From positions 62,001 through 126,000 of IMG/VR virus record IMGVR_UViG_3300030673_000004: a stretch of 64,000 bases of DNA; one strand, written 5' to 3'. Made by a program: the position numbers and the translations under genes. The notes below the pieces were generated by a model. That model made no database searches and was not told where the DNA came from. It saw only the letters and a list, made by a program, of their open reading frames with translations. Positions 6,431 through 48,561 of this stretch are shown here, piece by piece (position 1 is the stretch's first letter; every line of letters begins with the position of its first letter).

Positions 6431-6925
6431 TCAAACAGAATTACGCTGTCTCAACGAGTAGATCGTATGATAGGGCTGCCCCAGTTCCTGGGCTATCTGC
6501 ATTGTCGTCATACCTTTGGCAACTAATTCAAGCACTCGTGGAAGTTCTTCAGAGGGCTTCTTACGCGCCTTAGACGTACCGGAGATCAACCTACTGCGAC
6601 GAGGCACCCGCAGGCGATTTTGACGGCAGTAATGGTCTACATAGGAAAAATCACGACCAACCTCAGAAGCAATCTCACCGACGGTACGACCTTCAGTAGC
6701 TAACGCCTCAATACGTTGATGAAGTTGTGAAATGCTCTCTTGTCGAAAGATACCGTAGCTCTGAACAATCTGACGAACACGCTCACGGGACAAGGAAACG
6801 CAGCACCCAATATCGTCATAAGTAGCACCACTCTTAGCTAGTGCTAATATAAAAGAATCTCGCGAATAGCTACTAGAAGCGCTACCACCAGAAGAGTCTA
6901 CCCTATTCTTATCAAGTGTATCCAT
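6431..6925 (-). CDS. Multi-HTH DNA-binding protein
   Basis: GATYDDIGCCVSLSRERVRQI (sigma region 4-like HTH) plus two further HTH-like segments (GRTVGEIASEVG, GMTTMQIAQELG). Confidence 0.75.
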   Translation of the reverse strand: MDTLDKNRVDSSGGSASSSYSRDSFILALAKSGATYDDIGCCVSLSRERVRQIVQSYGIFRQESISQLHQRIEALATEGRTVGEIASEVGRDFSYVDHYCRQNRLRVPRRSRLISGTSKARKKPSEELPRVLELVAKGMTTMQIAQELGQPYHTIYSLRQRNSV

Positions 6926-11053: not shown

Positions 11054-11881
11054 TCAACCTCGTAAACGAGACTCTACATCTGTGACATCTCGTGTATCCA
11101 CGGCGTAACCTGGACGAATAAAGCCAATAAAACCATCAACCTTTGCCTGTTCCTCATTATAAAACTTACCAGCAGGACCATCCAAGTAATGCACAAGACC
11201 AGTCTTTGCTTTAACGGAAGCAGGCAGAGTAACTAGATCTGTATAGTGCGCATGCACGCCTGACTTGAAAGCAGCCGTCTCGCAGTCATGAAAAATCAAG
11301 TCAGCCTGTTCATAGAACACTTTTATCTGACTAGGACAAAACTGGGTATCTGTTGTAAAGAAAACACGATACCCTTCCTCGGATGTCACCAAAATGCCAA
11401 ATGAGTCAGTCAAGGCTCGTCCATTCATGACATGAACAGTCTGAACAGGATCAAACGAAATACCTTCCCAAGTAAACGACTCATTAGGCTCAATAGGATG
11501 TAGATCAAAGTAATCAGCAAAAGTATTCACATGACCTTCAATAGACTCCAACGTACCGCGAAGAACATGCGCCCATAGCTTCGTAAGAACGGTACTAATA
11601 CCATAAAGCTTTGGCTTAGGTGCCCGAGAAACACCTCCCCAAGGATAGCGGTTAAACGCCAACCACTCAAGCCCATGGACATGGTCACCGTGCAAATGAC
11701 TGATATAGACACCATCTACATCAAAAGCACCCAGATTAGCGTATTGTGCTAGCGAGTAGGGCGCTGTAGCACCACAGTCAACCAACAAACGCTTACCTGT
11801 ATTTGATTGAATCACAGCCTGACACTGCCATAGACCAGCAGGAGCAAACGCGGAACCAGCACCAGCCCAAAGAATTTTCAT
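11054..11881 (-). CDS. MBL-fold metallo-hydrolase, Apyc1-like (putative cyclic-nucleotide phosphodiesterase)
   Basis: GAGSAF, LLVDCG, SHLHGDHVHGLE, TDT, FHDC, GVHAHY..L..LP...K.K..LVHY. Confidence 0.8.
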   Translation of the reverse strand: MKILWAGAGSAFAPAGLWQCQAVIQSNTGKRLLVDCGATAPYSLAQYANLGAFDVDGVYISHLHGDHVHGLEWLAFNRYPWGGVSRAPKPKLYGISTVLTKLWAHVLRGTLESIEGHVNTFADYFDLHPIEPNESFTWEGISFDPVQTVHVMNGRALTDSFGILVTSEEGYRVFFTTDTQFCPSQIKVFYEQADLIFHDCETAAFKSGVHAHYTDLVTLPASVKAKTGLVHYLDGPAGKFYNEEQAKVDGFIGFIRPGYAVDTRDVTDVESRLRG

Positions 11882-11955: not shown

Positions 11956-12774
11956 TCACAACGGTACATCTAAACCAGCAAGATCCTCGGGTATACTGTA
12001 AGCTACAGACAATTTACGAGCCAAATAAGAATCCACTAACTCAGAATTATCGGATATAGCCAATTTAGAGAATATAAAATCACTACCAGCTAAGGACAGC
12101 AAGCCAAAAAGATCTAAAACGTTTAGCTCACAACCTAGCCCAACAACTCGCGTTGTGCCCACCAAGGTATCATGGTACATATGGTAATGACCATGTAAAA
12201 TAAGTCGTGGCTGTATCGCAGCAGCTACGTTATCTAACGTAGCACGATTAGCCTCCCCTGCACTATATAAGTGCTTCAAATTAAAATCAATTGAAGTAGG
12301 AGCATCATGACAGACAAGAACATCACACCTAGGAGCACACAAAGTATGCATAATATCCTTGTAGCCAATACACTCCAGACCAGGAAAAACAGTAGCGCCA
12401 AGGACACGAGAAATGGCATCAATGGAATAAGCACCACCTAAAAAGACAAAATGTAACTTCTCAAAGATAAAATGAAATCCACGCGCTGCCCAAAACAACG
12501 AGGGTAATAGCTCATGAAAAGATAATACATCAGCGCGATGAGGCAGCATATAATGATCTTCATGATTACCATCAATAAAAACAACAGGTATCCCTGTCTC
12601 TTGAGCTAGCCGAGAACAAACACGAAGAAATCTACGAAACGCGGGAATACGCGGAAAATAACCAAAATCACCAACCTGAAGAATCCTATCAACAGATTGG
12701 AGACAAGCCAACTTAAACGCTAGCTCTATAGCAGCGATATCACCATGAATGTCACCAACGACTAAAATCTTCAT
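11956..12774 (-). CDS. Calcineurin-like metallophosphoesterase
   Basis: GDIHG, VGDFG, DGNHE, CHDAP, HGHYH. Confidence 0.9.
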   Translation of the reverse strand: MKILVVGDIHGDIAAIELAFKLACLQSVDRILQVGDFGYFPRIPAFRRFLRVCSRLAQETGIPVVFIDGNHEDHYMLPHRADVLSFHELLPSLFWAARGFHFIFEKLHFVFLGGAYSIDAISRVLGATVFPGLECIGYKDIMHTLCAPRCDVLVCHDAPTSIDFNLKHLYSAGEANRATLDNVAAAIQPRLILHGHYHMYHDTLVGTTRVVGLGCELNVLDLFGLLSLAGSDFIFSKLAISDNSELVDSYLARKLSVAYSIPEDLAGLDVPL

Positions 12775-13325
12775 ACAAAAATATCAGATAATGATGTTTG
12801 ACGCGCAGTCGTTAAACCCGACTCCTGCATTAAAACAGCAAGAACATACGAATTAGGCATAATATGAGGATTTAGTTTATTAAATTCCTGTTCAGATAAC
12901 CCAAAATAACGACAAAGAAACAGACCAACAGCACCACTACGAGAGACACCAGCAGCACAATGAACATAAATAGGAGTTTCTGATACATCAGAAACATAGT
13001 CTAAAATATTACGGGCCTGAGCCGAAGTAAACAATATAGAGGCACCATCAGCTATATTAGGCGTAGAGTCAGTAAAAACAAGAGACAGTACAGAATCAAC
13101 TCCAAGACAAGATAAACCAAGCTTAGCTGTCTCTGTGTCTGCCCAAATACCTCCACTATATGATGCATATGCCAAATCTGTATCTAAGGTTACTTCATCA
13201 CAAATAGAAATAAGTTTAGCTCCTGGCACATATAAAGCAGGAAATGCCCACCTATGATGCAGCACAGACAACACCATCGCGGCACGAGGTACCACACGAA
13301 CAAAAGTAGGCTTAGCTCTAAGCAT
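12771..13325 (-). CDS. Cys-dependent protein-tyrosine/dual-specificity phosphatase-like protein
   Basis: HCAAGVSRS (CX5R) P-loop; downstream PNSYV. Confidence 0.85.
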   Translation of the reverse strand: MLRAKPTFVRVVPRAAMVLSVLHHRWAFPALYVPGAKLISICDEVTLDTDLAYASYSGGIWADTETAKLGLSCLGVDSVLSLVFTDSTPNIADGASILFTSAQARNILDYVSDVSETPIYVHCAAGVSRSGAVGLFLCRYFGLSEQEFNKLNPHIMPNSYVLAVLMQESGLTTARQTSLSDIFV

Positions 13326-13361
13326 ACTGACAAGTATACAAAAAAGTAACCATAAATGAAA

Positions 13362-14621
13362 CTATTTAGTTGGTGCTTTTGTTGTTGGAACTTTAACAGG
13401 CAGTTCTTTTGGAACCTGAAGCATAGCAACAGGAACACGCAAACGACGAATCTCACCAAATTCAGAGTGGTAGTCTACAACCTCAGTGGCTCGCTGCGCC
13501 CTGTAACCCTCACCGGCAGCATAAGCGTCACGTGGGGGCATGATAGGATGATTCTCAACAAGAAGCCCTTCGGACTCATCACGAGTAGTCAAATAAGTAC
13601 CACCTTGACGTGTCTGATGAATATGGCCACAATGACCATATCGGTACTTAGTCTGCCCCCACAATTCAGGGAAATCTGCAGATACAACAGATTGCAACCT
13701 GCGTGCCTGTATGCGGTCACCATGGGTAAACACAAGAAAGGTCTTTCCATGTACAATAGGGATTATGTTACTCGTAGGAACAACAATATGTACCTGAGGA
13801 GATTTCTCGTAAGCAGCCGCCAAAATCATAGAGGCAGCACAACTTGTATGATAATCATGATTACCAGGAACAAAAACAACTTCAACTTCAGGAGCGCGAC
13901 GAGCTGCTTCTTCTATAATAGAACGAAAAGCGAGCACGCCAAGCTGCAATGTATGCATCCAGCGACTGTCAACATCAAGGATATTCCCAGAACGCTCTGT
14001 GACAGGTGTGCGTGAATCTGCGTGCCAAAAATCGCCTAAGGAAGCTATGAGTATTTTCTGGACTTCACCGGGCGCAGGTAAACAATACTCAGCAGCACGC
14101 TTCAGTAAATTAAGACCTGCTTTAGTATCGTAGTCATCATCATTTGTTTCCTTACCCCAAGCGCGCATACCTAAATGATGATCGCTAAGCATCCAAGTGC
14201 GTAATATATTTTCTCTAGGTAGCTTTCGACAAACAGGTATCTTGGGAGCGGCACCCCGGACCTGATCTGCAAATTCTTGAGCCCACGCCTCAAATTCAGC
14301 TACATCAGGATGAAGACGACGCCACTCTTCTATAATACCCTTTTCGGAATGCACATGAACAGTTGTTTTGCTCATACGCATGCTTAGTGGGATAGGTACT
14401 TTAACTAATGATGAGTGCTCACCAGCATTTATGCAACGCTGCTCTACTCGCTTGTAGACATCGCGAACAGTACTACGAGCAAGCCCAAGCTGAGTCGCAG
14501 CGGTCCTTATAGCACCTGTAGAAATCACAGCAGCTATAATATCACGCTCTTTGGATGTCTCAACAAAGTGACTCAACTCAACAGGTATACTAACGCTAGA
14601 ACGACTCATGGATACCCCCAT
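13362..14621 (-). CDS. Metallophosphoesterase with N-terminal HTH
   Basis: IRTAATQLGLARSTVRD (HTH); SDHHLG, LGDFWH, PGNHD, THGD, GHIH. Confidence 0.85.
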   Translation of the reverse strand: MGVSMSRSSVSIPVELSHFVETSKERDIIAAVISTGAIRTAATQLGLARSTVRDVYKRVEQRCINAGEHSSLVKVPIPLSMRMSKTTVHVHSEKGIIEEWRRLHPDVAEFEAWAQEFADQVRGAAPKIPVCRKLPRENILRTWMLSDHHLGMRAWGKETNDDDYDTKAGLNLLKRAAEYCLPAPGEVQKILIASLGDFWHADSRTPVTERSGNILDVDSRWMHTLQLGVLAFRSIIEEAARRAPEVEVVFVPGNHDYHTSCAASMILAAAYEKSPQVHIVVPTSNIIPIVHGKTFLVFTHGDRIQARRLQSVVSADFPELWGQTKYRYGHCGHIHQTRQGGTYLTTRDESEGLLVENHPIMPPRDAYAAGEGYRAQRATEVVDYHSEFGEIRRLRVPVAMLQVPKELPVKVPTTKAPTK

Positions 14622-14660: not shown

Positions 14661-16940
14661 TTAATACAAATCTGGGCAAATCGAACACACAGGTGCTGCC
14701 ATAAAGGCATTGAACTTTCGGATAGCTCGATCATTCAGGCACGTTTTCAATGTATCCATAGAACAATTCTGGACATCAAACACATGAAGTATATGATATA
14801 CAAACGACAAACGTGATGGGTGTGACCAAGAATTATCATTTGCAGATATGGCAGAAATGAAACACTGCAGAAATTGGATCTGAAAATAAGTGGAAAAAGC
14901 TATAACACGAGAAGATACGCTGCTGTACCGACTATGAGACATAACATAAGAAGGCACATCATCAATACGCCTCTTAAGCGTCTTAAGATACGCACCTGCG
15001 ATAACTTTATACAAATGTGATATATCATCTGTAGAGTAAACAAGAGATGGACGTTCAAAACCAACAGCATCAAACCAGATATCGTTAAAGTAGCCGAGCA
15101 TCTCAATACCAGGCGCAATGAACTTACGGTCTGAAATCTCAAAAAACCTAGTCACACTCTCATACAATTTTGACGCAATGTGACGTGCAACGGTATCTGC
15201 ATCATGATTACTTAGAAGCTCTACAATTTCTTGAGTATACTCAGATTTCACAGTCTTATCCAAATAAGACAAAGTGTCTTCTTCAGAAGCTCCAGTTAAA
15301 ACAGTCACAGCAACAGCAGGAATAAAACCACGAGATACTTCACCGAAAAGGTCCTGACGTGCATCCACGACATCAGAATACTGACTCAAATTATCCATGT
15401 CCAAAAGACGATCAAAAATTGACGCCCCACTCACCCGACCATAGGAATAGGACAAAGTATGCAGTAACTCACGCTTATCCTCATTACCACGATAAGTAGT
15501 ACGAGAAGACTGAAATTCACGCAAGGTCCTGATAGACGAAGACCAAGGAGACACAGAAATCCGATGTACCATAACCTTAAAAATCTTTAAGCTCTTCAAA
15601 GCCAAAGGAAGCCAAATCCTTTGATACTCATGATAGTGCTGACGAGTAAAGAATAGCTTTAACAACTTAGGTACATCTAGAGCAGTAGCTCGGCACAAAC
15701 GAAACAATACAAGACCAACAAGTTCTGCAAAACCTGGCGTAGCTGCTCTTCTAGAGTCTTCAACACAAATACCGGGATACTCATCATTTCGGATATTGAT
15801 ATAACCAATAAAACGAATATCCTTATTATAGAAATTAAGACGCAAAAATGAATTGCGAGATAAGTTTCTAGCGTTTAAGCCAATCCAAAAATCACCAAAC
15901 TTAGCTACAGGCATGTCAATATCAGGAAGAGATCCCGACCCAGGTAAGGGTTTATTATTCCCAATATAACCAATATCTAAATCAGAAGGAATCCCATGAA
16001 GGCAGCGACGATATGCGGGACGATCATGGAAGGATAGCTGCGTATCCAAGGCTACTAGCCATGACAGTAATACATCTTTATTAGCTGCAATCCACACAGG
16101 ATCACATGCTAAATGAGCACACGTCATATACTCCTTCATTATAGCATAAACATATGAAGGATTTACAGAATTTAAGTAATCACCACCAATACCACGATAT
16201 TCAATAACACCATGAGATTGAAATTTAACTAAATTAATACTGACATGCCTATGCTTCGCAGCTAACCCTGTAAGACGTAAAATACCCCGAGCAGCCTCAG
16301 GCAAAAGAATATGATCTAAGCCTAATGAGGCAATACCGCAAAAAGATTTCAAGCGGGCTAGGGCATAAGAAAACAAGGACATGGTTGGAAAGCAATAGCT
16401 GTTTCCAAGGCGATTTACATGACGTAGATCACGCTGATCCAAGCAAGAAGTCAGCAACAAAAAAACCAAAGGATTAAAGTCATCACGAGTAATGGAAGAG
16501 GACGAAAATGTAAAATGGAGACCACAACTATCATTTGTTAAGCCGTTAACACGTTTTAACAAATCAAAAGATCTGCACAGTAACTTCTCACTATCTAAAA
16601 TAGAAACAACAGGGCTAACAACTTCAACAGGTAAGAAACGTGACCCATCAGTCAAATCCTCATAGTCTTCCTGCTGAGGATCAATAGATCCATCACGAGT
16701 AAAATGCCAGCATGTATAGTCAGCTTCCCCTTGATGCTTGTGACCAGCATAAACATTACAGACAGCCCCAATAGGCTGATCAAACTCACGCTGAAAAGCC
16801 GATGCTAAATCTTCACGAGAAGCACCAGGAACAGCAATAACGGTTTCAAACTCGAAACCGCAAGAATAACCGGCACGAGATAATTCAAGATCACTCATGA
16901 CAGGTACATCAAGGCTTTTATGTGCAAGAGTCAGACGCAT
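14661..16940 (-). CDS. Putative amidoligase (COOH-NH2 ligase, Amidoligase_2-like), paralog 3
   Basis: CGFEFE, WHFTRDGSI, VEVVSP, SCGLHF, HVSINL, IEYRGIGG; long unique C-terminus. Confidence 0.78.
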   Translation of the reverse strand: MRLTLAHKSLDVPVMSDLELSRAGYSCGFEFETVIAVPGASREDLASAFQREFDQPIGAVCNVYAGHKHQGEADYTCWHFTRDGSIDPQQEDYEDLTDGSRFLPVEVVSPVVSILDSEKLLCRSFDLLKRVNGLTNDSCGLHFTFSSSSITRDDFNPLVFLLLTSCLDQRDLRHVNRLGNSYCFPTMSLFSYALARLKSFCGIASLGLDHILLPEAARGILRLTGLAAKHRHVSINLVKFQSHGVIEYRGIGGDYLNSVNPSYVYAIMKEYMTCAHLACDPVWIAANKDVLLSWLVALDTQLSFHDRPAYRRCLHGIPSDLDIGYIGNNKPLPGSGSLPDIDMPVAKFGDFWIGLNARNLSRNSFLRLNFYNKDIRFIGYINIRNDEYPGICVEDSRRAATPGFAELVGLVLFRLCRATALDVPKLLKLFFTRQHYHEYQRIWLPLALKSLKIFKVMVHRISVSPWSSSIRTLREFQSSRTTYRGNEDKRELLHTLSYSYGRVSGASIFDRLLDMDNLSQYSDVVDARQDLFGEVSRGFIPAVAVTVLTGASEEDTLSYLDKTVKSEYTQEIVELLSNHDADTVARHIASKLYESVTRFFEISDRKFIAPGIEMLGYFNDIWFDAVGFERPSLVYSTDDISHLYKVIAGAYLKTLKRRIDDVPSYVMSHSRYSSVSSRVIAFSTYFQIQFLQCFISAISANDNSWSHPSRLSFVYHILHVFDVQNCSMDTLKTCLNDRAIRKFNAFMAAPVCSICPDLY

Positions 16941-27928: not shown

Positions 27929-28117
27929 GTGAGCTGTCTTAAGGGATGGGGGATTCTGTACGCAGACCACTCAGACGTGACGGATTCCACTGAGACAAAC
28001 GTTGAACGAGCTGTAGCATGTCTGAAAACTCATTTCAGTGAGGTCACTGATGTTCCTATGGAGTACTCCTGTGCTGTTATGGGCGAGTGCTGTGAAGAAG
28101 AATGTTGCGATGAATAA
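27929..28117 (+). CDS. Small acidic Cys-rich protein
   Basis: 62 aa ending GECCEEECCDE; AAGGA RBS upstream. Confidence 0.5.
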   Translation: MSCLKGWGILYADHSDVTDSTETNVERAVACLKTHFSEVTDVPMEYSCAVMGECCEEECCDE

Positions 28118-28183
28118 ATAAAATTGATGTCTAACAAGTGGTGTAGCTGACACAACCGAGATACACGCATCTCATACATGTGG

Positions 28184-28206
28184 GTTCTTAGGCTAACCCA
28201 CCCGCC
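28184..28206 (+). repeat. 23-bp direct repeat, copy 2
   Basis: GTTCTTAGGCTAACCCACCCGCC. Confidence 0.95.
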
Positions 28207-28270
28207 GTCGCACTTCTCACGCTTGCGTGAGGCTCTGGTATAAGAAAAGTTTTGTTCTTTTGAAAAAATC

Positions 28271-28298
28271 TTGACTTCTTCAATTTTTTGTGTATACT
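28271..28298 (+). promoter_or_regulatory. sigma70 promoter
   Basis: TTGACT-16-TG.TATACT. Confidence 0.75.
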
Positions 28299-28305
28299 TA
28301 TGTTT

Positions 28306-28434
28306 ATGAGAACGACAACACAAGCACAGGCGGCTAAAGCCGAACAAGGTAATACAATTACCAGTGCTCAGACATGTGGGTATAATAGCTTACGTGTCCG
28401 TGTGGGTCAAAGTTCTCAGGTTGATCTGCCTTAA
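28306..28434 (+). CDS. 42-aa leaderless micro-ORF
   Basis: MRTTTQAQAAKAEQGNTITSAQTCGYNSLRVRVGQSSQVDLP; ATG 7 nt after the -10 box; terminator follows. Confidence 0.55.
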   Translation: MRTTTQAQAAKAEQGNTITSAQTCGYNSLRVRVGQSSQVDLP

Positions 28435-28461
28435 AGAAAGGCAACAAATCTAAGAGACCTT

Positions 28462-28490
28462 GGCCCACTTCTCCGGAAGCGGGCCTTTTT
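28462..28490 (+). terminator. Intrinsic terminator
   Basis: GGCCC.CTTC-TCCG-GAAG.GGGCC followed by TTTTTGTTTTT. Confidence 0.8.
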
Positions 28491-28534
28491 GTTTTTGTGC
28501 ATTCTTGAAACAAAAGAAGATAAAAACAAAACTC

Positions 28535-28563
28535 TTGACAAATCTACATAAATTGAGTATCTT
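28535..28563 (+). promoter_or_regulatory. sigma70 promoter at the head of the RNA island
   Basis: TTGACA-17-TATCTT. Confidence 0.75.
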
Positions 28564-28569
28564 TAGAAT

Positions 28570-29530
28570 ATCAGCACAGAGCAAGAGCATCGACAGCGTC
28601 ACAAGACAATATCGGTAATCAAGCGAAGTGTCATTCATCTTTGACAGTTTTGGTGGGCGCATTGCCCAAGTGAGTGTTAAGCAATCATCTTCATTGGGAG
28701 GTTGGCCTAAAAGCAGCCATCCTATAATGAGTGACGAGCAGAACCGAACAGTAAAGGCTTTAGAGGAAACATCCTGTGACTGGGAGAGCTCACATGTCTT
28801 GAAAGACAGCACGTGGGTGTTGACACCGAATATGAAGCAGGGTGCTAAAGTTCTTGGGGAAGGTTGATAGGAAAGTCGCATGGGAGTCGCGTCCCTGGCA
28901 ACGTCAAAATGGCTAAGACTGAAACTATCTTTTAATGTGAAGTCCATCATAGCAATATGTTCACCTTAGTGACAGCCTGTCTATTCCGATGCACTCGGAC
29001 GGCAGAGAGACTTGATTTGTGGTTGGTTTGTCTCTTTCTGTCGGACTCGGTCAATCAATCTTGTGTAGTCTTTGGCGTATAAGCACACCAATGGAAGTGA
29101 TCGTAGATTACAGTACTTGTGAAACTAAACGCTCGGGTGGTAGCCAACCCACAGAGGCGCTAAGGGGTACAATGGAAAGTTGTACCTGTCGATAGGGACC
29201 TAAGCTACCCCTACAGGGAAATGAGTCGGGTGATCCGAATGATACCTTGTACAGCCGTAGTAATACGGTCTTCTCGGAACTTGCGTGAAATTAAACCACA
29301 CGGGAAGAGAAGCGTAAGTGCGCTTTGAAATAAGCTAGACAATAAGTACTGTTTTTTACTGCAGGCTCACGCTTGCGTGAGTCTGAAACGCCATCTCAGT
29401 GAGAGTGCTGATGGCATTATGCATGATAGAATGCTGGTATTGCATAACTTGTACCTTAGCCAACCTAGGGAATCAAGTCCAGAATCGTAGCGTTGGGACT
29501 CAACCGAGTCGGTGAAATTCCTGTCGGTTA
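28570..29530 (+). ncRNA. Large structured ncRNA candidate (family unassigned; GOLLD/ROOL-like context)
   Basis: About 960 nt after a promoter with no credible plus-strand gene; dense hairpins at 28795-28808, 29166-29186, 29255-29268 and 29362-29385; abuts the first tRNA. Confidence 0.6.
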
Positions 29531-29532
29531 TT

Positions 29533-29606
29533 TGGGGTATAGCTCAGTAGGTAGTAGCTCCGTGCTGTTAACACGGTGGTCAAAGGTTCGAGTCCTTTTA
29601 CCCCAG
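29533..29606 (+). tRNA. tRNA-Asn(GTT)
   Basis: TGGGGTA/TACCCCA acceptor; CCGTG-CTGTTAA-CACGG; AAAGG-TTCGAGT-CCTTT. Confidence 0.92.
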
Positions 29607-29659
29607 CTATCGAACTTTAGTTTTAGTTCGTGGTCAAACTTTGTATAAATCTGGTAAAA

Positions 29660-29720
29660 CGGGAAGGTAGGACGCTGGGTCTGAAAACCCTGGGTATCAG
29701 TTCGATTCTGATAGTGTGCT
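29660..29720 (+). pseudogene. Degenerate tRNA-Phe(GAA) fragment
   Basis: GGGT-CTGAAA-ACCC arm and ATCAG-TTCGATT-CTGAT T-arm; no pairable D-arm or acceptor 5' strand. Confidence 0.45.
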
Positions 29721-29723
29721 TTT

Positions 29724-29877
29724 GTTCTTCCGCTGAAATGGACACTAAGCGGACGTGGTGCTGGGACCTTTAAGTTACAGGTAATGCTGGGCGGCGGTCA
29801 AAATCGGACAGAACCTTGTAGGTTGTATTGGGTCGCTCCCTATACAGCAAGTGGACTGGGCACCGCAGCGGAGGAAC
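29724..29877 (+). ncRNA. Unassigned structured RNA (~154 nt)
   Basis: 12-bp closing helix GTTCTTCCGCTG/CAGCGGAGGAAC; internal GGTGC/GCACC and a 29822-29848 hairpin. Confidence 0.55.
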
Positions 29878-29886
29878 TTTGTTGCT

Positions 29887-29960
29887 GGTCCTATCGTCTA
29901 ATTGGTTAGGACACCACCCTCTCACGGTGGGAGTGTGGAGTTCAAGTCTCCCTAGGACTA
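29887..29960 (+). tRNA. tRNA-Glu(CTC)
   Basis: GGTCCTA/TAGGACT; CCACC-CTCTCAC-GGTGG. Confidence 0.92.
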
Positions 29961-30187
29961 TAAATAAGTGTAGTTTTGCATTAAGCAGACTTTGAAATAA
30001 GAGTGCTTAATGTTTAGCTGCATGAAGTCCGGTAGTCGCCCTGAGTAGCCAGCGGAGACGTTGACCTTTGGGTGAAGCTGAAATAATTGCTTCCTACCGG
30101 CATTTTGCTTTGCTTATATGTACAATGTAATAACGCTATACATATAAGTGAATTGTGACTAGTTCTTCGTTAGGAGAATCCTCACAA

Positions 30188-30263
30188 GCCGCGCATTAGT
30201 CTAAATGGTAAAGACATTCCGGAATCATTCCGGAAAATGTTGGTTCGAATCCAGCACGTGGCA
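30188..30263 (+). ncRNA. Atypical tRNA-like RNA with TCA at the tip of a palindromic anticodon arm
   Basis: D-arm GTCT/AGAC, T-arm GTTGG-TTCGAAT-CCAGC, acceptor with a 2-nt bulge; anticodon arm TTCCGGAA-TCA-TTCCGGAA. Confidence 0.7.
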
Positions 30264-30264
30264 T

Positions 30265-30360
30265 GATGGGATAGCTCAATTGGTAGAGCGGCTCGCCCCC
30301 TTTAGGGATCGGGTGTGAAGGAGACTTCGTCGGTTGATGGTTCGAATCCATCGCTCATCT
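30265..30360 (+). ncRNA. Atypical tRNA-like RNA with expanded anticodon region and long variable arm
   Basis: GATGGGA..TAGCTCAATTGGTAGAGC; GCTCG[CCCCCTTTAGGGAT]CGGGT; variable arm GTGAAG-GAGA-CTTCGT; GATGG-TTCGAAT-CCATC. Confidence 0.7.
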
Positions 30361-30793
30361 ATCTGTATAATAAGTAGTTGCGAACTTATTATTGTGCGCT
30401 TGAGCACTAGCCTGTATAAGGTTTTCTTTATACAGAAAGCAGAGCAACTTGGGAGTAGCCAAGTTATATTAACCTACTCGCAATCATGATCAAGATTAAA
30501 TAGAATCCGTTCTTGCTCGGGGCATATTGCAGACCGCCCATAGGTTTCAGACGTTATTGAAAATCTATGAATGTTTCTGCTAGACAATAAGCATTTCATA
30601 TGGAGACTCTATGTCCCTGCACGCATGCATCTAGTTAGCGCTTGCTCTGCTTGCACGATATACAGAACAGTTGATATATGTGAATGCTGAGTTGCTGTTT
30701 CCTGTGTAAATAGGTTACAGTTTGGTAGCATTTTGTGAAAGCAACTTACTACCACGAGGATGATACAGGTAATCTCGTAAAAACTGTATCAAT

Positions 30794-30866
30794 GCCAGTG
30801 TAGCTCAGTTGGTAGAGCAGTTGCTTTGTAAGCATCAGGTCGCGAGTCCAAGTCTCGCCGCTGGCT
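30794..30866 (+). tRNA. tRNA-Thr(TGT)
   Basis: GCCAGTG/CGCTGGC; loop TTTGTAA. Confidence 0.92.
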
Positions 30867-30867
30867 C

Positions 30868-30996
30868 TTGTTCCTTGCTGTTAAGAATGAAGTTCATCTT
30901 ACCTAAAACAAGATATTTTGGATTCGAATCCAAAATACGCTTAACCGCGTATGGCTTTGGTGCCAATTTCTTCATTTTGCTTGTTTGCAGGAACAA
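30868..30996 (+). ncRNA. Y-RNA-like element 1 (degenerate tRNA-mimic domain)
   Basis: TTGTTCCT/AGGAACAA stem; TGCTGTT...TTGTTTGC signature; inner hairpins in T-AS-D order (TTTTGGA-TTCGAA-TCCAAAA, TACGC/GCGTA, GGC-TTTGGT-GCC). Confidence 0.7.
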
Positions 30997-31001
30997 ACTT
31001 T

Positions 31002-31074
31002 TCAGTCATGCTGTTCTGACATCAGGTTCATCCTTTTAAGATATTTTCCCGATGTTGATTTGTTTGCTGACTGA
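31002..31074 (+). ncRNA. Y-RNA-like element 2 (minimal, 73 nt)
   Basis: TCAGTCA/TGACTGA stem; TGCTGTT...TTGTTTGC; GGTTCATC motif; no tRNA domain. Confidence 0.7.
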
Positions 31075-31087
31075 TTTACTGTAGAAA

Positions 31088-31227
31088 GGTCAGTGCTGTT
31101 AGAGATCGGTTACTTCCAATTTCAAGGACGAGGTCACAGGTTCGAGTCCTGTTCCTGGCTTTTAATGCCGGGATAGCTCAGTTGGTTAGAGCGCGTAAAC
31201 TATCCGGTTTCGTTTGTTTGCCTGACT
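31088..31227 (+). ncRNA. Y-RNA-like element 3 (YrlA-type, full tRNA-mimic domain)
   Basis: GTCAG/CTGAC stem and signature; T-arm ACAGG-TTCGAGT-CCTGT precedes acceptor TCCTGGC-loop-GCCGGGA, then D-arm GCTC-AGTTGGTTA-GAGC. Confidence 0.85.
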
Positions 31228-31232
31228 GTTAA

Positions 31233-31305
31233 TGGCCCTTAGCTCATCTGGTAGAGCGCTACTCTGATATGGTAGAGGTGCTTGGTTCGAGTCCAAGAGG
31301 GCCAA
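31233..31305 (+). tRNA. tRNA-Ile(GAT)
   Basis: TGGCCCT/AGGGCCA; CTACT-CTGATAT-GGTAG. Confidence 0.92.
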
Positions 31306-31311
31306 TTCTTT

Positions 31312-31377
31312 ATACTTGCTGTTAGTCTTCAGATACATCTTTGGCTTGTAAAACCTGAAGACAGTTGTTTGCAGTAT
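31312..31377 (+). ncRNA. Y-RNA-like element 4 (minimal, 66 nt)
   Basis: ATACT/AGTAT stem; TGCTGTT...TTGTTTGC; GTCTTCAG/CTGAAGAC; GATACATC motif. Confidence 0.7.
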
Positions 31378-31385
31378 GAAGATAT

Positions 31386-31457
31386 GCACGAGTAGGTCAG
31401 TGGTAGACCACCTGCTTGCCAAGTAGGATGTCGTGGGTCCGAAACCCATCTCGTGCT
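31386..31457 (+). tRNA. tRNA-Gly(GCC)
   Basis: GCACGAG/CTCGTGC, U73; loop TTGCCAA. Confidence 0.92.
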
Positions 31458-31581
31458 TAGATGCGTAAATGAAATATGTCAACAAATGCTTCTATCATAT
31501 CTAGTAATCCGTGTATTCCATCTGGAGTTTATCCTGTGAAATCACCATCACCAGCCACACCTCCGAAGCATACATAAAAGT

Positions 31582-31706
31582 CCTATCTCAGTATAACCTT
31601 ACGAGCTAGCTGCCCTTGTTAGTGATAATAAGGAAGGTCAGGTCAAAGTCCTGGAGCGCCCCCGTTAGGCACAATAAGGAGCTTACGGTAACGGTACTGA
31701 GATAGG
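31582..31706 (+). ncRNA. Unassigned rod/multibranch RNA (125 nt)
   Basis: Perfect 12-bp helix CCTATCTCAGTA/TACTGAGATAGG enclosing further helices and CAGG-TCAAAGT-CCTG. Confidence 0.55.
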
Positions 31707-31710
31707 CAAT

Positions 31711-31782
31711 GCACCAGTAATTCAGTGGTAGAATCTCTGCCTTCCAAGCAGTTGGTCCCCAGTTCGATCCTGGGTTGGTGCT
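31711..31782 (+). tRNA. tRNA-Gly(TCC)
   Basis: GCACCAG/TTGGTGC, U73; loop CTTCCAA. Confidence 0.92.
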
Positions 31783-31966
31783 TTTGTTCATGGTGATGCT
31801 TGAGCAATAAATAGTATACTTTCATCACAGAGTATAATATAAATCTCCCGTGCATAAGAAGATGCGGAAATTCGGATAACGCAGCTTATGTGCTAACGGA
31901 CACTGGTGTTGATCGCACCCTGTTAGGGAGTTTTTGATCAGTACGTTTTCAGATCAAAACATTATT

Positions 31967-32050
31967 GGGTTGGATTGTAGTACGGCTACTACAGATGGAC
32001 TGTAAATCCATTGCCTTTCGGCTTTGCCTGTTCGAATCCGGAGCAACCCA
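31967..32050 (+). tRNA. tRNA-Tyr(GTA), imperfect T-stem
   Basis: ATGGA-CTGTAAA-TCCAT; variable arm GCC-TTTC-GGC; GGGTTG/CAACCC acceptor. Confidence 0.8.
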
Positions 32051-32089
32051 CTTCATTTTTCATAATCACCATTGTTAAGGGAGTTACTT

Positions 32090-33478
32090 ATGCCTACCAT
32101 CGTTGAGAATGCTCACGGTGTTCGGGCTTACGAATTTGGAGATGAAGTGTCTCTTCGTAGGCTTGTTCTTGCGTCCTTGCTGACTGAAGATTCTTCAGAC
32201 ATGCAAAAGCAAATCGCTGACTTGGTGCCTCGTGTAAGTCCTACGTCTGTGATGAATCTGGCGATCACAGCTCGTAAGGATTATGCGCTACGCAAGGTTC
32301 CCTTGTTTTTGGTTCGTGAGATGTCTCGCTATGAAAACCATCGTCCCTATGTAGCAGATACTCTAGCTCAAGTTATTGAGCGTGCTGATGAGATGAGCAC
32401 TTTTCTATCCATGTATTGGGCAGGAAAGAATGTAGGCGAGGGGCGTGAGCCTCTTGCTAGGCAGGTTAAGCTTGGGTTGGGGCGTGCTTTTGGGAAGTTC
32501 AATGCTTTCTCTTTGGCTCGTTATGATCGTAATAGTGCTGCATTTTCCATGCAGGATGTTATTAGGATCGCGCATCCTCGACCTGAGTCTCCTGAGCAGG
32601 AAGTACTCTTTCGACAGATTGCTAAGGGTGAAGCTCTTCCTCCTGTAAAGGATTGGGAACACGAGCTATCTCAGTCAAAGGACAAGAAGGCTTCATGGGT
32701 TTCTCTTTTGGAGAACAAGCAGCTTGGTGGCCTTGCTCTGTTGAAGAACTTGCGTAACATGCTGCAAGCCGGTGTCTCTCAAAGTTTGATTGTCTCAACT
32801 ATTGCTCAGCATCCGTTCAAGTATGTTTTGCCCTTTCGGTTCATCTCTGCTCTTCGTGAGCTTGTGCTATCTGATGTAGTTGTCTCTAACGAACTGCGGG
32901 ATGCTTTAGAACAAGCAATGTTTCGCGGTTTGGTGGATTTTCCTAAGCTTGACGGAGATACCGTGTTCCTTGTTGATGTGTCTGGGTCTATGAGTCATCC
33001 TCTTGGGATGTCTTTCTCAGATCGGCACGGTAGGACTCATGCTAGCTCTATGACTCGATCTGATGGCGCTGCTGCTTTGACTATGATGCTGAATGAAATT
33101 TGTGATGTACCTCACATCTTTAAGTTTCATACGCGAATCATTCCAATTTCCGGGTCTCGCGGTTTTGCTCTAGGGTCTCAAGTTAACTATGCGCGGCAAA
33201 ACACACGTCTGGGTGACTGCTTAAAGCAGGCTCAGCATGAGATGTTGGTTAAGGGAATCACTCCTAAGCGTTTGATTGTTTTAACGGATGAGGAGTCTCA
33301 GGATCCTGTTGGGGAAGGATTCGCTCAGTATAACTACATGATCAACGTGAAGTCGGCTTCTTACAGTATTGCTTATAAGTCATGGATCCGCATGACTGGC
33401 TTTAGTGAGCATATTGTTAAGCTGCTTGTTGGGCATGAGCGGTTAGATAAGTATGTTAAGGAACATGTAGCATTGTGA
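32090..33478 (+). CDS. rsr: Ro60/Rsr TROVE-vWA RNA-binding protein
   Basis: LRRLVLASLL, LRKVPLFLVREM, VIERADEM, KFNAFSLARYDR, WEHELS, LALLKNLRNM, VLPFRFISA, VDVSGSM (MIDAS), LIVLTDEESQD; ATG with an AAGGGAG RBS. Confidence 0.93.
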   Translation: MPTIVENAHGVRAYEFGDEVSLRRLVLASLLTEDSSDMQKQIADLVPRVSPTSVMNLAITARKDYALRKVPLFLVREMSRYENHRPYVADTLAQVIERADEMSTFLSMYWAGKNVGEGREPLARQVKLGLGRAFGKFNAFSLARYDRNSAAFSMQDVIRIAHPRPESPEQEVLFRQIAKGEALPPVKDWEHELSQSKDKKASWVSLLENKQLGGLALLKNLRNMLQAGVSQSLIVSTIAQHPFKYVLPFRFISALRELVLSDVVVSNELRDALEQAMFRGLVDFPKLDGDTVFLVDVSGSMSHPLGMSFSDRHGRTHASSMTRSDGAAALTMMLNEICDVPHIFKFHTRIIPISGSRGFALGSQVNYARQNTRLGDCLKQAQHEMLVKGITPKRLIVLTDEESQDPVGEGFAQYNYMINVKSASYSIAYKSWIRMTGFSEHIVKLLVGHERLDKYVKEHVAL

Positions 33479-47449: not shown

Positions 47450-47887
47450 ATGTCAGATGAGTCCCTTACAAAAGTTCAGCATCGTGTATCTTCTATCCTG
47501 CATGTGCAGGTGGGTGAATCAGGTGTCTGGGAGCCTACTACAGATCAGCTTGATGCTCTAGTCAGTCAGTTTGTTTCGGCAGTAAACACAAATGTAGCTC
47601 TTGCAGTAGTAGCTACTCGTAAGGGCGTGACTGCTCAGTGTATCCATATTCCAGATACCGATGCTGCTATACTGCATGTTGAGGCAGGCGCACCTGGATG
47701 GGAGCCGTTACCATCCGAGCTTAAAGATCTAACAGATTTGTTTGAGAAAGCAGCTACTTCTGACGGTAGTATTGCTGTAGTAGCTACTCGTACCGGTGTG
47801 ACTGCTCATGTTGTGGATTTATCCAATCCTGATTCTGAGGCATTTCCTGAGTTTCTATATGACACTGATTGCGAGGATGCGTCATGA
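47450..47887 (+). CDS. Protein with two tandem ~60-aa repeats
   Basis: ILHV..G..G.WEP....L..L...F..A.....AVVATR.GVTA occurs twice. Confidence 0.8.
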   Translation: MSDESLTKVQHRVSSILHVQVGESGVWEPTTDQLDALVSQFVSAVNTNVALAVVATRKGVTAQCIHIPDTDAAILHVEAGAPGWEPLPSELKDLTDLFEKAATSDGSIAVVATRTGVTAHVVDLSNPDSEAFPEFLYDTDCEDAS

Positions 47888-48561
47888 ATCTCTATGAACA
47901 TGCTGTGAGCGAATTTGAGTTGCTTGAGCAGAATTTGGACAGTGATCCAGATAAGCATCCTATCATTTTAGAATTCAAAGCTGAAATTCTTTCTCTAGTT
48001 AAGCGTTTTGCGGACTCTGGTCCATCTGGTGGTTCTGCTCCCTTTTATGCGTCTGCCGTATCTCGGGCTATTAAAGATCTCTTTATGTTTGATCCTATTG
48101 GTCCCCTCACAGGAGATGATAGTGAGTGGGTAGATACATCTGAAATTAGTGGCCTGTCTGAAGGAACGCTATGGCAGAATAAGCGGCTATCTTCTGTGTT
48201 TAAGGATGGTAATGATCCGGCTCATTACTTGGATGCTGTTGTATTCCAAGGTGAGTCTGATTATGATCGTTTCAGTGGTCATGTTGATAATGTTTCCAGT
48301 GTTTGGTGTATTAAGAGTTTTCCTTTTAGACCCAAAACATTCACAATAGACGTGTATCGTGTTCCTAGTGAGACAGATCCAGATCGTGTCAGTTGCCGTG
48401 AAGGTGATTATTTATACCACATTAAAGATCCTTCACAGTTAGAGGCTGTTCGCGACTACTATGATGAGAAGATATCTCGGATATCTTCAATAGACTCAAC
48501 ATCGGCTGTAGGCGCGCAAGTTGATGCTGTTTGCTGCCCAAAGACAGTAAAGTTGGACTAA
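47884..48561 (+). CDS. Hypothetical protein
   Basis: GAGG RBS; GPSGGSA, PIGPLTGDDSEW, WQNKRLSSVFK. Confidence 0.75.
   Translation: MNLYEHAVSEFELLEQNLDSDPDKHPIILEFKAEILSLVKRFADSGPSGGSAPFYASAVSRAIKDLFMFDPIGPLTGDDSEWVDTSEISGLSEGTLWQNKRLSSVFKDGNDPAHYLDAVVFQGESDYDRFSGHVDNVSSVWCIKSFPFRPKTFTIDVYRVPSETDPDRVSCREGDYLYHIKDPSQLEAVRDYYDEKISRISSIDSTSAVGAQVDAVCCPKTVKLD

What the first reader, a model, noticed from the sequence alone, without database searches (positions are those of the whole stretch)
28570..29530. About 1-kb ORF-poor, hairpin-dense region: candidate giant ncRNA
Seen: its own promoter, no credible gene and many short helices (e.g. GGTACAA/TTGTACC, CCGTA-GTAA-TACGG, an 11-bp stem at 29362), ending flush with tRNA-Asn. 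Established: GOLLD and ROOL are very large phage RNAs typically found next to tRNA clusters. I cannot match this one to either family from memory, so it may be a new class.
Basis: partly seen in the sequence, partly recalled or inferred. Interest (0 to 1): 0.72.

Follow-up and report, generated by a model that had tools for sequence, protein, structure and literature searches.

The report
Composite structured RNA heading phage tRNA array
The flagged 1-kb stretch of this 375-kb peat phage is a real, conserved, promoter-driven non-coding RNA unit at the head of a 34-tRNA array; it is not GOLLD or ROOL, its last 250 bases are a divergent copy of the little-studied phage RNA family RAGATH-33, and the 530 bases before that match no described RNA family.

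Summary
Window 28570-29530 has a sigma-70-like promoter (28535-28563), no conserved ORF on either strand, and many helices. It ends at tRNA-Asn (29533).

A syntenic relative (L024, about 76% nt identity) keeps the promoter and the whole 28570-29365 block. Substitutions there show no codon periodicity (71/68/72), whereas flanking genes do (p 1e-21 to 1e-33). Nine indels are mostly not multiples of 3.

Consensus folding beats column shuffles (z about -8 to -9). G·U-type one-sided changes favour the + strand.

Rfam gives no GOLLD, ROOL, OLE or group I/II match, in the window or the whole genome. The only lead was a sub-threshold RAGATH-33 hit.

I found that RAGATH-33 is really the core of a roughly 240-nt RNA closed by a 5'/3' stem, found in tRNA arrays of large phages. 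49 of 59 pairs show compensatory changes. A model built without the window matches 29107-29353 end to end (42.9 bits, E about 1e-10).

The 5' 530 nt is structured and conserved, but I found it in only two phage lineages.

Metatranscriptome contigs recover only pieces, mainly the RAGATH-33-like module. A composite transcript processed into stable modules is therefore more likely than one giant RNA, though the latter is not excluded. Function is unknown.

The parts
28535..28563 (+). Sigma-70-like promoter (TTGACA, 17 nt, TATCTT). Predicted transcription start is near 28570.
   Evidence: Conserved in L024 with one spacer change (A3 columns 307-335). A DNA contig of run X5 ends at 28569.
28573..28678 (+). 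5' hairpin domain of about 105 nt. It contains a 56-nt block (28627-28683) that is identical in L024 except for one loop base.
   Evidence: Consensus folds. Block conservation. No Rfam match.
28681..29101 (+). Large multi-helix central domain of about 420 nt. About 20 helices are predicted, several with compensatory changes (for example 28932-28941/28960-28969 with 5, 28986-28989/28995-28998 with 3, 29001-29010/29033-29042 with 2). A candidate long-range closing stem pairs 28684-28707 with 29049-29101.
   Evidence: The closing stem competes with local alternatives and cannot be settled with two sequences. RNA contig 28903-29051 in X7.
29107..29353 (+). Divergent member of the extended RAGATH-33 family. 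Closing stem P1 is 29110-29120/29342-29352. The core GGAAAUGAGUCGGGUGAUCCGAAUGAUACC lies at 29216-29245. Other helices are 29163-29173/29179-29189, 29193-29197/29209-29213, 29254-29259/29264-29269 (GUAA loop), 29270-29275/29307-29312 and 29322-29325/29332-29335. A lineage-specific inserted hairpin lies at 29135-29152.
   Evidence: Rfam RF03102 gives 31 bits at 29159-29246. Model R1, built without the window, gives 42.9 bits over model positions 1-239 of 239. Covariation. RNA contigs 29128-29335 and 29144-29340.
29352..29357 (+). U-run directly after the P1 3' strand. It is the probable 3' end or partial terminator of the unit.
   Evidence: Seen in the sequence. A T-run follows P1 in nearly all family members. 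Collinearity with L024 ends at 29365.
29362..29385 (+). 11-bp hairpin CAGGCTCACGC/GCGTGAGTCTG. A 95% identical copy of its core lies at 28216-28234. It is not conserved in L024.
   Evidence: D3, I17.
29386..29445 (+). Variable spacer with two hairpins. L024 has about 430 nt of unrelated sequence here.
29446..29529 (+). Separate conserved element of about 85 nt (87% identical in L024) with two hairpins. It abuts tRNA-Asn here, but in L024 it abuts an HNH endonuclease ORF.
29533..29607 (+). tRNA-Asn (GTT), the first of 34 tRNAs of the array.
28271..28497 (+). Neighbouring upstream small unit, outside the finding. It has its own promoter (28271-28298), a body of about 190 nt and an intrinsic terminator (GGCCCAC...GCGGGCC plus T5, 28464-28492). 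It is either a small RNA or a 42-48-aa peptide gene.
   Evidence: A DNA contig in X9 covers 28248-28483. alifold z = -10.6.

Best explanation
Window 28535-29357 is one non-coding transcription unit at the head of the tRNA/tmRNA array of a huge phage. A sigma-70-type promoter drives an RNA of about 785 nt on the + strand. The RNA folds into three self-contained domains: a 105-nt 5' hairpin domain, a multi-helix domain of about 420 nt with no described family, and a 247-nt 3' domain. The 3' domain is a divergent member of the RAGATH-33 family and is closed by its own 5'/3' stem followed by a U-run.

Shown: the region is non-coding, conserved and structured; the RNA strand is +; the promoter is conserved; and the 3' domain is homologous to RAGATH-33.

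Inferred:
- The transcript partly terminates at the U-run and partly reads through into the tRNAs.
- It is cut by the RNases that process the tRNAs into stable modules, of which the RAGATH-33-like RNA of about 240 nt accumulates most.
- The RAGATH-33 core (GAAAUGAG-hairpin-AAUGAUAC), kept almost unchanged between rumen, gut and peat phages, is a docking site for a protein or another RNA. The lineage-specific 5' domains would be accessory.

The biological role is probably tied to the translation, RNA-quality-control and counter-defence genes of this island (tRNAs, tmRNA, Ro60 with a Y-like RNA, Tad3-like, Apyc1-like). That role is not established.
For: Non-coding:
- No codon periodicity and indels that are mostly not multiples of 3, against strong periodicity in three flanking genes.
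- ORFs are broken in L024 and have no Pfam hits.

Conserved:
- 76% nt identity over 28245-29365 with L024, similar to coding DNA of the same genome pair (71-85%).
- Blocks of complete identity alternate with variable stems.

Structured, on the + strand:
- alifold z = -7.9 and -9.3, with compensatory pairs about twice the shuffle expectation.
- One-sided G·U-compatible changes are 15 on + against 3 on -.

Promoter: conserved.

RAGATH-33 homology:
- Rfam sub-threshold hit.
- 22 IMG/VR loci share the core, most scoring 128-140 bits, all in tRNA arrays of 36-410-kb contigs.
- The extended structure has 59 pairs. 98.2% of cells are paired and 49 pairs have double changes, against 13-19 in the slid controls.
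- R1, built without the window, hits 29107-29353 full length at 42.9 bits. L024 scores 50.6, L009 79.7 and L022 58.2.
- There is a single copy in the genome.

Modularity:
- In other phages RAGATH-33 stands alone, directly after a tRNA or its own promoter.
- Synteny with L024 breaks right after the U-run.

RNA evidence:
- Contigs 100% identical to 28903-29051 and 29128-29340 occur in bioreactor metatranscriptomes at word depth 12-16, with nothing between them or on the tRNAs.
- Six RNA runs hold parts, at most 0.37 of the words.
Against: - Only two lineages carry the 5' 530 nt. Its covariation therefore rests on one pairwise comparison, in which roughly half of the 'compensatory' pairs are expected by chance.
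- Alternative folds, local or long-range closing stems, cannot be told apart.
- Logan contigs break at strain variants and low coverage, and RNA libraries can contain DNA. The discrete RNA pieces are therefore weak evidence for processing (caveats).
- The window copy fails Rfam's gathering score for RAGATH-33 (31 against 120.4 bits) and lacks the family's 22-nt 5' hairpin in its usual form.
- No promoter-like site lies between 29357 and the tRNAs, so the tRNAs need read-through. The U-run may then not be a real 3' end.
- No function is known for any RAGATH-33 RNA.
Confidence: 0.6

Rival explanations
1. It is one giant functional RNA of about 785 nt (up to 960 nt if it runs to the tRNA), of a new class. 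A RAGATH-33-type domain has been fused to a novel 5' body of about 530 nt. It acts as a whole, possibly self-assembling as ROOL and GOLLD do.
For: - There is a single conserved promoter and no internal promoter or terminator.
- The block 28245-29365 stays collinear with no indel over 7 nt in L024, while synteny breaks just after it.
- A possible 20-bp long-range closure pairs 28684-28707 with 29049-29101, with compensatory changes.
- The phage has no ROOL or GOLLD of its own, whereas several canonical RAGATH-33 phages carry ROOL nearby.
Against: - The RAGATH-33 domain is closed by its own P1 stem and is a stand-alone RNA in at least 20 other phages.
- No covarying pairing joins the 5' body to the 3' domain; the only joining helix predicted is a 3-bp GCA/UGC.
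- No RNA run holds more than 0.37 of the words, and the pieces recovered are discrete.
Confidence: 0.25
2. It is only the structured 5' leader or spacer of the polycistronic pre-tRNA transcript. Its helices would serve transcript stability or RNase processing, and the fragments would be by-products with no function of their own.
For: - It lies directly upstream of 34 tRNAs on the same strand, with no other promoter in between.
- The other spacers of the array are also ORF-free and conserved; for example 30110-31459 is 85% identical in L024.
Against: - The RAGATH-33 core is nearly invariant across phages from rumen, gut and peat, and it has its own promoter in several of them. That is not expected of a passive spacer.
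- Long blocks in the 5' part are 100% conserved at 24% overall divergence.
- L024 carries the same unit although its first tRNA lies about 1 kb further on, behind an HNH gene.
Confidence: 0.12
3. It encodes one or more small proteins on either strand.
For: ORFs of 79 aa (+) and 166 aa (-) exist.
Against: - Both are disrupted in L024.
- There is no codon periodicity and no Pfam hits.
- Compensatory and G·U-type changes fit RNA helices.
Confidence: 0.02

Closest known systems
RAGATH-33 RNA (Rfam RF03102; candidate structured RNA from comparative genomics, function unknown)
   Same: - The 28-nt core GAAAUGAG-UCGG-loop-CCGA-AUGAUAC is shared.
- The GGnnnnCAuAGAAAG hairpin is shared.
- In the extended form defined here, the GNRA-type hairpin, the CUUCUC/GAGAAG-type helix, the UGAAAY hairpin, the closing P1 stem and the trailing U-run are all shared.
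- The setting is the same: tRNA arrays of large phages.
   Different: - The window copy scores 31 bits against a gathering score of 120.4.
- The 22-nt 5' element is replaced by a different inserted hairpin (29135-29152).
- One loop lacks GGUAAC.
- The copy has no promoter of its own. It sits at the 3' end of a longer conserved non-coding transcript, in a peat phage rather than a rumen or gut phage.
ROOL (RF03087) and GOLLD (RF02032): large ornate phage-associated RNAs near tRNAs
   Same: It is a large, ORF-free, highly structured RNA beside phage tRNA genes with unknown function (PMC5737381). ROOL lies within about 2 kb of canonical RAGATH-33 in L010, L012 and L016.
   Different: Neither model matches the window even at E<=10, nor the whole 375-kb genome. 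ROOL and GOLLD are described as single folds with multistem junctions and pseudoknots (PMC5737381). Here the fold is a string of self-closed domains, one of which occurs alone elsewhere.
Bacterial Y RNAs (YrlA, RF02553), partners of Ro60/Rsr
   Same: It is a stable RNA whose 5' and 3' ends pair, and a TROVE/Ro60 gene (32072-33478) lies 2.7 kb downstream.
   Different: - The YrlA-like signal lies elsewhere, at 31128-31198 (34.8 bits).
- Complete canonical RAGATH-33 phages lack TROVE.
- No YrlA similarity was found in 28570-29530.

Membership tests
GOLLD (RF02032) | Covariance-model score at or above the gathering score (150 bits). | tested here: not met
   There was no hit in the window at gathering, none at E<=10 in 28100-30300, and none in the whole genome. 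That last search had no positive control that rang.
ROOL (RF03087) | Covariance-model score at or above the gathering score (99.1 bits). | tested here: not met
   Searches gave no hit. The same Rfam model scored 158-320 bits in L010, L012 and L016, so it works.
OLE, group I and group II introns, RNase P, 6S and other Rfam 15 families | Any covariance-model match in 28570-29530. | tested here: not met
   Apart from RAGATH-33 there were only weak matches (E of 1 or more) to unrelated families, and those lie upstream of 28570.
RAGATH-33 (RF03102) | Rfam gathering score of 120.4 bits. | tested here: not met
   31.0 bits, E 7.5e-4, over model positions 1-113 with the 22-nt element skipped. L024 scores 37.7 bits.
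RAGATH-33 (RF03102) | Conserved core GAAAUGAG / 4-bp hairpin / AAUGAUAC. | tested here: met
   The pattern matches exactly at 29218-29245. The core is identical or nearly so in all 22 IMG/VR loci.
RAGATH-33 (RF03102) | Shared secondary structure, supported by covariation, over the full RNA of about 240 nt. | tested here: met
   Model R1, built from 17 loci without the window, aligns 29107-29353 to positions 1-239 at 42.9 bits, E about 1e-10 (rough). In A5, 98.2% of cells are paired and 49 of 59 pairs have double changes (that alignment was fitted to the model). The window and L024 show 11 compensatory pairs within it.
RAGATH-33 (RF03102) | Genomic setting inside tRNA arrays of large phages. 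| tested here: met
   Only 3 MAG contigs among 185,579 species genomes carry the core.
Y RNA / YrlA (RF02553) | tRNA-like module and a Ro-binding stem recognised by the model. | tested here: not met
   There is no hit inside 28570-29530. The sub-threshold hit is at 31128-31198.
Protein-coding gene | An ORF kept in relatives, with third-position bias of substitutions. | tested here: not met
Giant ornate RNA (as a kind, not a family) | A single discrete transcript over 500 nt forming one integrated fold. | not testable with these tools
   Only Logan contigs of metatranscriptomes were available, and they show pieces. Two sequences cannot resolve long-range pairings.

The most novel reading that the evidence does not exclude
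The whole 28570-29357 stretch is one functional RNA of about 785 nt and a new class. An ancient, widely distributed phage RNA module (RAGATH-33) has acquired a lineage-specific 5' body of about 530 nt. It takes the place that ROOL or GOLLD occupy in other large phages, and may form a large RNA-only or RNA-protein assembly.
Probability: 0.25. Interest if true: 0.75.

Novelty: new variant of a known kind. Interest (0 to 1): 0.55.

Why it matters
Large structured RNAs beside phage tRNA genes (GOLLD, ROOL) are among the least understood RNAs in biology. This locus adds three things.

1. RAGATH-33 is an Rfam motif of 113 nt with no literature in the searched library. It is really the core of an RNA of about 240 nt with nine helices and strong covariation, and it is essentially confined to tRNA arrays of large phages.
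2. A huge phage from peat carries a far-diverged copy at the 3' end of a conserved 785-nt non-coding unit. The first 530 nt of that unit match no described family. The module can therefore be stand-alone or embedded.
3. The unit sits in an island with 34 tRNAs, a tmRNA, a Ro60 homologue with a Y-like RNA, and anti-defence-type genes. That setting gives concrete hypotheses to test: translation take-over, RNA quality control or counter-defence.

The core is almost unchanged across very distant phages, which makes it a good target for pull-downs and structure determination.

Tried and rejected
- BLAST (distant mode) of 28100-29620 against 50,697 phage records hit only the tRNA-Asn part and one 39-nt chance hit.
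- The search for related loci with the upstream 326-aa protein and with TROVE in IMG/VR found nothing.
- nhmmer of seven sub-segments against L002-L023 found no homologue of any non-RAGATH part.
- Pattern scans for 5'-domain blocks:
  - TTTGACAGTTTTGGT..AAGTGAGTG in IMG/VR gave 0.
  - A relaxed form in JGI metagenomes returned only the source contig.
  - TAGGAAAG.CGCATG.GAGTCGCG gave 0.
  - GTTGAC.CCGAATATGAAGC gave one hit, L035, which lies in what reads as an open reading frame and has no other similarity, so I take it as chance.
- The protein search with the 491-aa neighbour returned only itself.
- TROVE homologues at 61-90% identity sit on short contigs that stop before the region.
- The idea that RAGATH-33 is the Y RNA of phage Ro was rejected. 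TROVE is absent from two complete canonical RAGATH-33 phages, and a YrlA-like signal lies elsewhere.
- An internal second copy of RAGATH-33 in the 5' part was suggested by AAUGAGUG and CCGAAUAUGA. It was rejected because R1 finds only one copy in the window and genome.
- My early impression that the region is better conserved than neighbouring genes was wrong. It is conserved about as well as coding DNA.
- The supplement of the paper that I believe first described the RAGATH motifs is not held, so I took no published description of RAGATH-33 from it.
- I did not build covariance models of the 5' domains. With two sequences they would add little beyond nhmmer.

Full report
**Setting**

The window is bases 62001-126000 of a 375.5-kb IMG/VR phage genome with direct terminal repeats. 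It was assembled from peat metagenomes.

From about 28.1 to 56 kb it carries 34 tRNA genes and a tmRNA, all on the + strand. Between them lie small ORFs. These include a TROVE/Ro60 homologue at 32072-33478, a Tad3-like ORF and HNH endonucleases. The stretch 28120-32070 has no ORF over 105 aa apart from the ones discussed below.

**The observation**

- A TTGACA-17-TATCTT promoter lies at 28535-28563.
- The named helices are there.
- tRNA-Asn starts at 29533.
- The single-sequence fold is only moderately better than shuffles: z = -2.49 on +, -1.57 on -.

The stronger test needed a relative.

**A relative**

The upstream 326-aa protein has one distant homologue, P0002. Its contigs (L024-L027, from ENA and Logan) are syntenic with the window.

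- Window 28245-29365 aligns to L024 11682-12800 at 76% identity. Coding DNA of the same genome pair is 71-85% identical.
- Both promoters and the terminator of the small upstream unit are kept.
- In 28568-29353 the substitutions fall 71/68/72 on the three codon phases (p = 0.94). There are nine indels, mostly of 1-2 nt. The 499-aa, 491-aa and TROVE genes show p of 1e-21 to 1e-33 and no indels.
- The 79-aa (+) and 166-aa (-) ORFs are broken in L024 and hit no Pfam family.

**Structure**

RNAalifold on the pair predicts 134 pairs in 28568-29110. Of these, 21 carry double changes, 14 carry one-sided compatible changes and none are broken.

Against 100 column shuffles:

| Region | Consensus-energy z | Compensatory pairs observed | Expected from shuffles |
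|---|---|---|---|
| 28568-29110 | -7.9 | 19 | 10.5 |
| 29107-29353 | -9.3 | 11 | 4.0 |

About half of the pairwise 'compensations' are thus expected by chance, so single helices in the 5' part are provisional. One-sided changes that keep a pair through G·U number 15 on the + strand and 3 on the - strand. The + strand consensus energy is also lower (-119.8 against -96.3 kcal/mol). This identifies + as the RNA strand.

**What the 3' part is**

Rfam gave no GOLLD, ROOL, OLE or intron hit at gathering, or at E<=10 in 28100-30300. The whole genome has no ROOL or GOLLD hit either. The ROOL model does ring in other loci.

The only lead was RAGATH-33 (RF03102) at 29159-29246: 31 bits against a gathering score of 120.4.

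- A pattern taken from its core found 22 IMG/VR loci in contigs of 36-410 kb.
- Sixteen of those loci are canonical RAGATH-33 at 128-140 bits. All are embedded among tRNA genes, and three lie within about 2 kb of ROOL.
- Reading their flanks shows that conservation runs about 110 nt beyond the Rfam model. The two ends pair.
- RNAalifold on 17 loci gives 59 pairs in nine helices, 19 with compensatory changes.

I built model R1 from these loci without the window. It matches:

| Locus | Position | Bits |
|---|---|---|
| Window | 29107-29353 (model 1-239 of 239) | 42.9, E about 1e-10, rough |
| L024 | 12532-12787 | 50.6 |
| L009 | 6458-6686 | 79.7 |
| L022 | 13094-13376 | 58.2 |

. There is exactly one copy in the 375-kb genome.

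On the 21-sequence alignment, 98.2% of cells pair. 49 of 59 pairs show double changes, against 13-19 when partners are slid. The caveat is that this alignment was fitted to the model.

They change compensatorily in L024, to GATGCAA/TTGCATC and CCTTA-GCAA-TAAGG.

In other phages the RNA follows a tRNA directly or has its own promoter, and a T-run follows the closing stem. It is therefore a stand-alone RNA of about 240 nt there. Among 185,579 species genomes the core occurs in only three MAG contigs, one of which is the 410-kb contig of L022. Within the collections searched, the family is thus essentially confined to large phage contigs.

**What the 5' part is**

28570-29106 has no Rfam match and no paralogue in the genome. 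I found no homologue in any other locus or collection that I could search.

Blocks of complete identity alternate with variable, often compensated stems. The longest is 28627-28683, with one difference in 57 nt.

Predicted top-level domains are 28573-28678 and a large domain 28681-29101. The large domain may be closed by 28684-28707 pairing with 29049-29101 or by local alternatives. Two sequences cannot decide between these.

**Where the unit ends**

Collinearity with L024 stops at 29365, just after the U-run (29352-29357) that follows P1. L024 then has about 430 nt of unrelated sequence.

The last 85 nt before tRNA-Asn (29446-29529) are a separate conserved element. In L024 that element abuts an HNH endonuclease ORF instead of the tRNA.

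The conserved unit is therefore promoter to U-run, about 785 nt, not the full 960 nt.

**RNA evidence**

Bioreactor metatranscriptome contigs 100% identical to the window cover 28903-29051 (depth 15.6) and 29128-29335 (depth 12) in run X7, and 29144-29340 in run X11. Both of the latter lie inside the R1 match.

Six RNA runs hold parts of 28570-29357, none more than 0.37 of the words.

There are caveats. Logan contigs break at variants and at low coverage. RNA libraries can contain DNA. No strand information is available.

The data fit accumulation of the RAGATH-33-like module as a discrete stable RNA. They do not prove it.

**Verdict**

The best reading is a composite non-coding transcription unit heading the tRNA array. 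It has two lineage-specific structured 5' domains and a divergent RAGATH-33 3' domain, and is probably processed into stable modules (confidence about 0.6).

- A single new giant RNA remains possible (about 0.25).
- A passive pre-tRNA leader is less likely (about 0.12), given the near-invariant core and the independent promoters elsewhere.
- Protein coding is excluded for practical purposes.

Function is unknown. The mechanism I commit to is a conserved docking module for a protein or RNA partner, co-expressed with the phage's translation and RNA-quality-control set. This is an inference from conservation pattern and context only.

Noticed in passing
window 31128-31198 (+), with ORF 32072-33478: There is a sub-threshold YrlA (Y RNA-like, RF02553) match of 34.8 bits, E 2e-5. 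It lies about 870 nt upstream of a phage TROVE/Ro60 gene. The same match occurs in L024 at 14932-15002 (33.1 bits). This suggests the phage encodes a Ro60-Y RNA pair inside its tRNA array. Other weak tRNA/YrlA-like signals lie at 30191-30360.
   Followed up: partly
window 29639-29873 (+): The 235-nt spacer between tRNA-Asn and tRNA-Glu is 96.6% identical to L033 314-546. L033 is a contig whose TROVE protein is only 62% identical to the window's. The spacer contains a tRNA-like T-arm. It looks like an ultra-conserved or horizontally moving ncRNA module.
   Followed up: no
window 28271-28497 (+): This is a small independent unit with a promoter (28271-28298), a body of about 190 nt and a strong intrinsic terminator (28464-28492). 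It is conserved in L024 and recovered as a 236-nt DNA contig from a freshwater sediment run. A 42-48-aa ORF keeps its frame in L024, but a 33-nt core is 100% identical and the fold z is -10.6. It could be an sRNA or a micro-protein; I could not decide.
   Followed up: partly
window 28216-28234 and 29366-29384: Two 95% identical copies of the hairpin CTCACGCTTGCGTGAG sit at module boundaries. One lies after the ORF ending at 28117 and one after the RAGATH-33-like RNA. They may be processing or termination signals.
   Followed up: no
L008 2428-4200 (-); also L011, L017, L019: Canonical RAGATH-33 phages have a promoter right after the RNA, followed by about 1.7 kb without ORFs over 77 aa. This stretch is conserved at 87-99% among them. 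It contains at least two similar copies of a motif like CGAATGGTYGGTGAG...CCRACT. Further undescribed ncRNAs are likely there.
   Followed up: partly
window 47869-48561 (+) and 11054-11881 (-): ORFs match the Tad3 Thoeris inhibitor (PF25185, 84.5 bits) and the anti-Pycsar Apyc1 / metallo-beta-lactamase fold (PF23023, 94 bits). Counter-defence-type genes therefore lie in and near the tRNA island.
   Followed up: no
window 227-2863 (-): The gyrase/topoisomerase IV subunit A homologue appears to be interrupted by an intein (Hint_2 and Intein_splicing matches at residues 82-232; both score below their Pfam cut-offs).
   Followed up: no
L024 13361-13837 (+): The relative carries a 158-aa HNH-type endonuclease ORF inserted just before its tRNA-Asn, and the ORF overlaps the tRNA's start. 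The window has no such ORF. This is evidence of homing-endonuclease traffic in these arrays.
   Followed up: no
L019 1595-1667 (+): A RAGATH-18 RNA (RF03064, 73.3 bits) lies in the same phage tRNA region as RAGATH-33.
   Followed up: no
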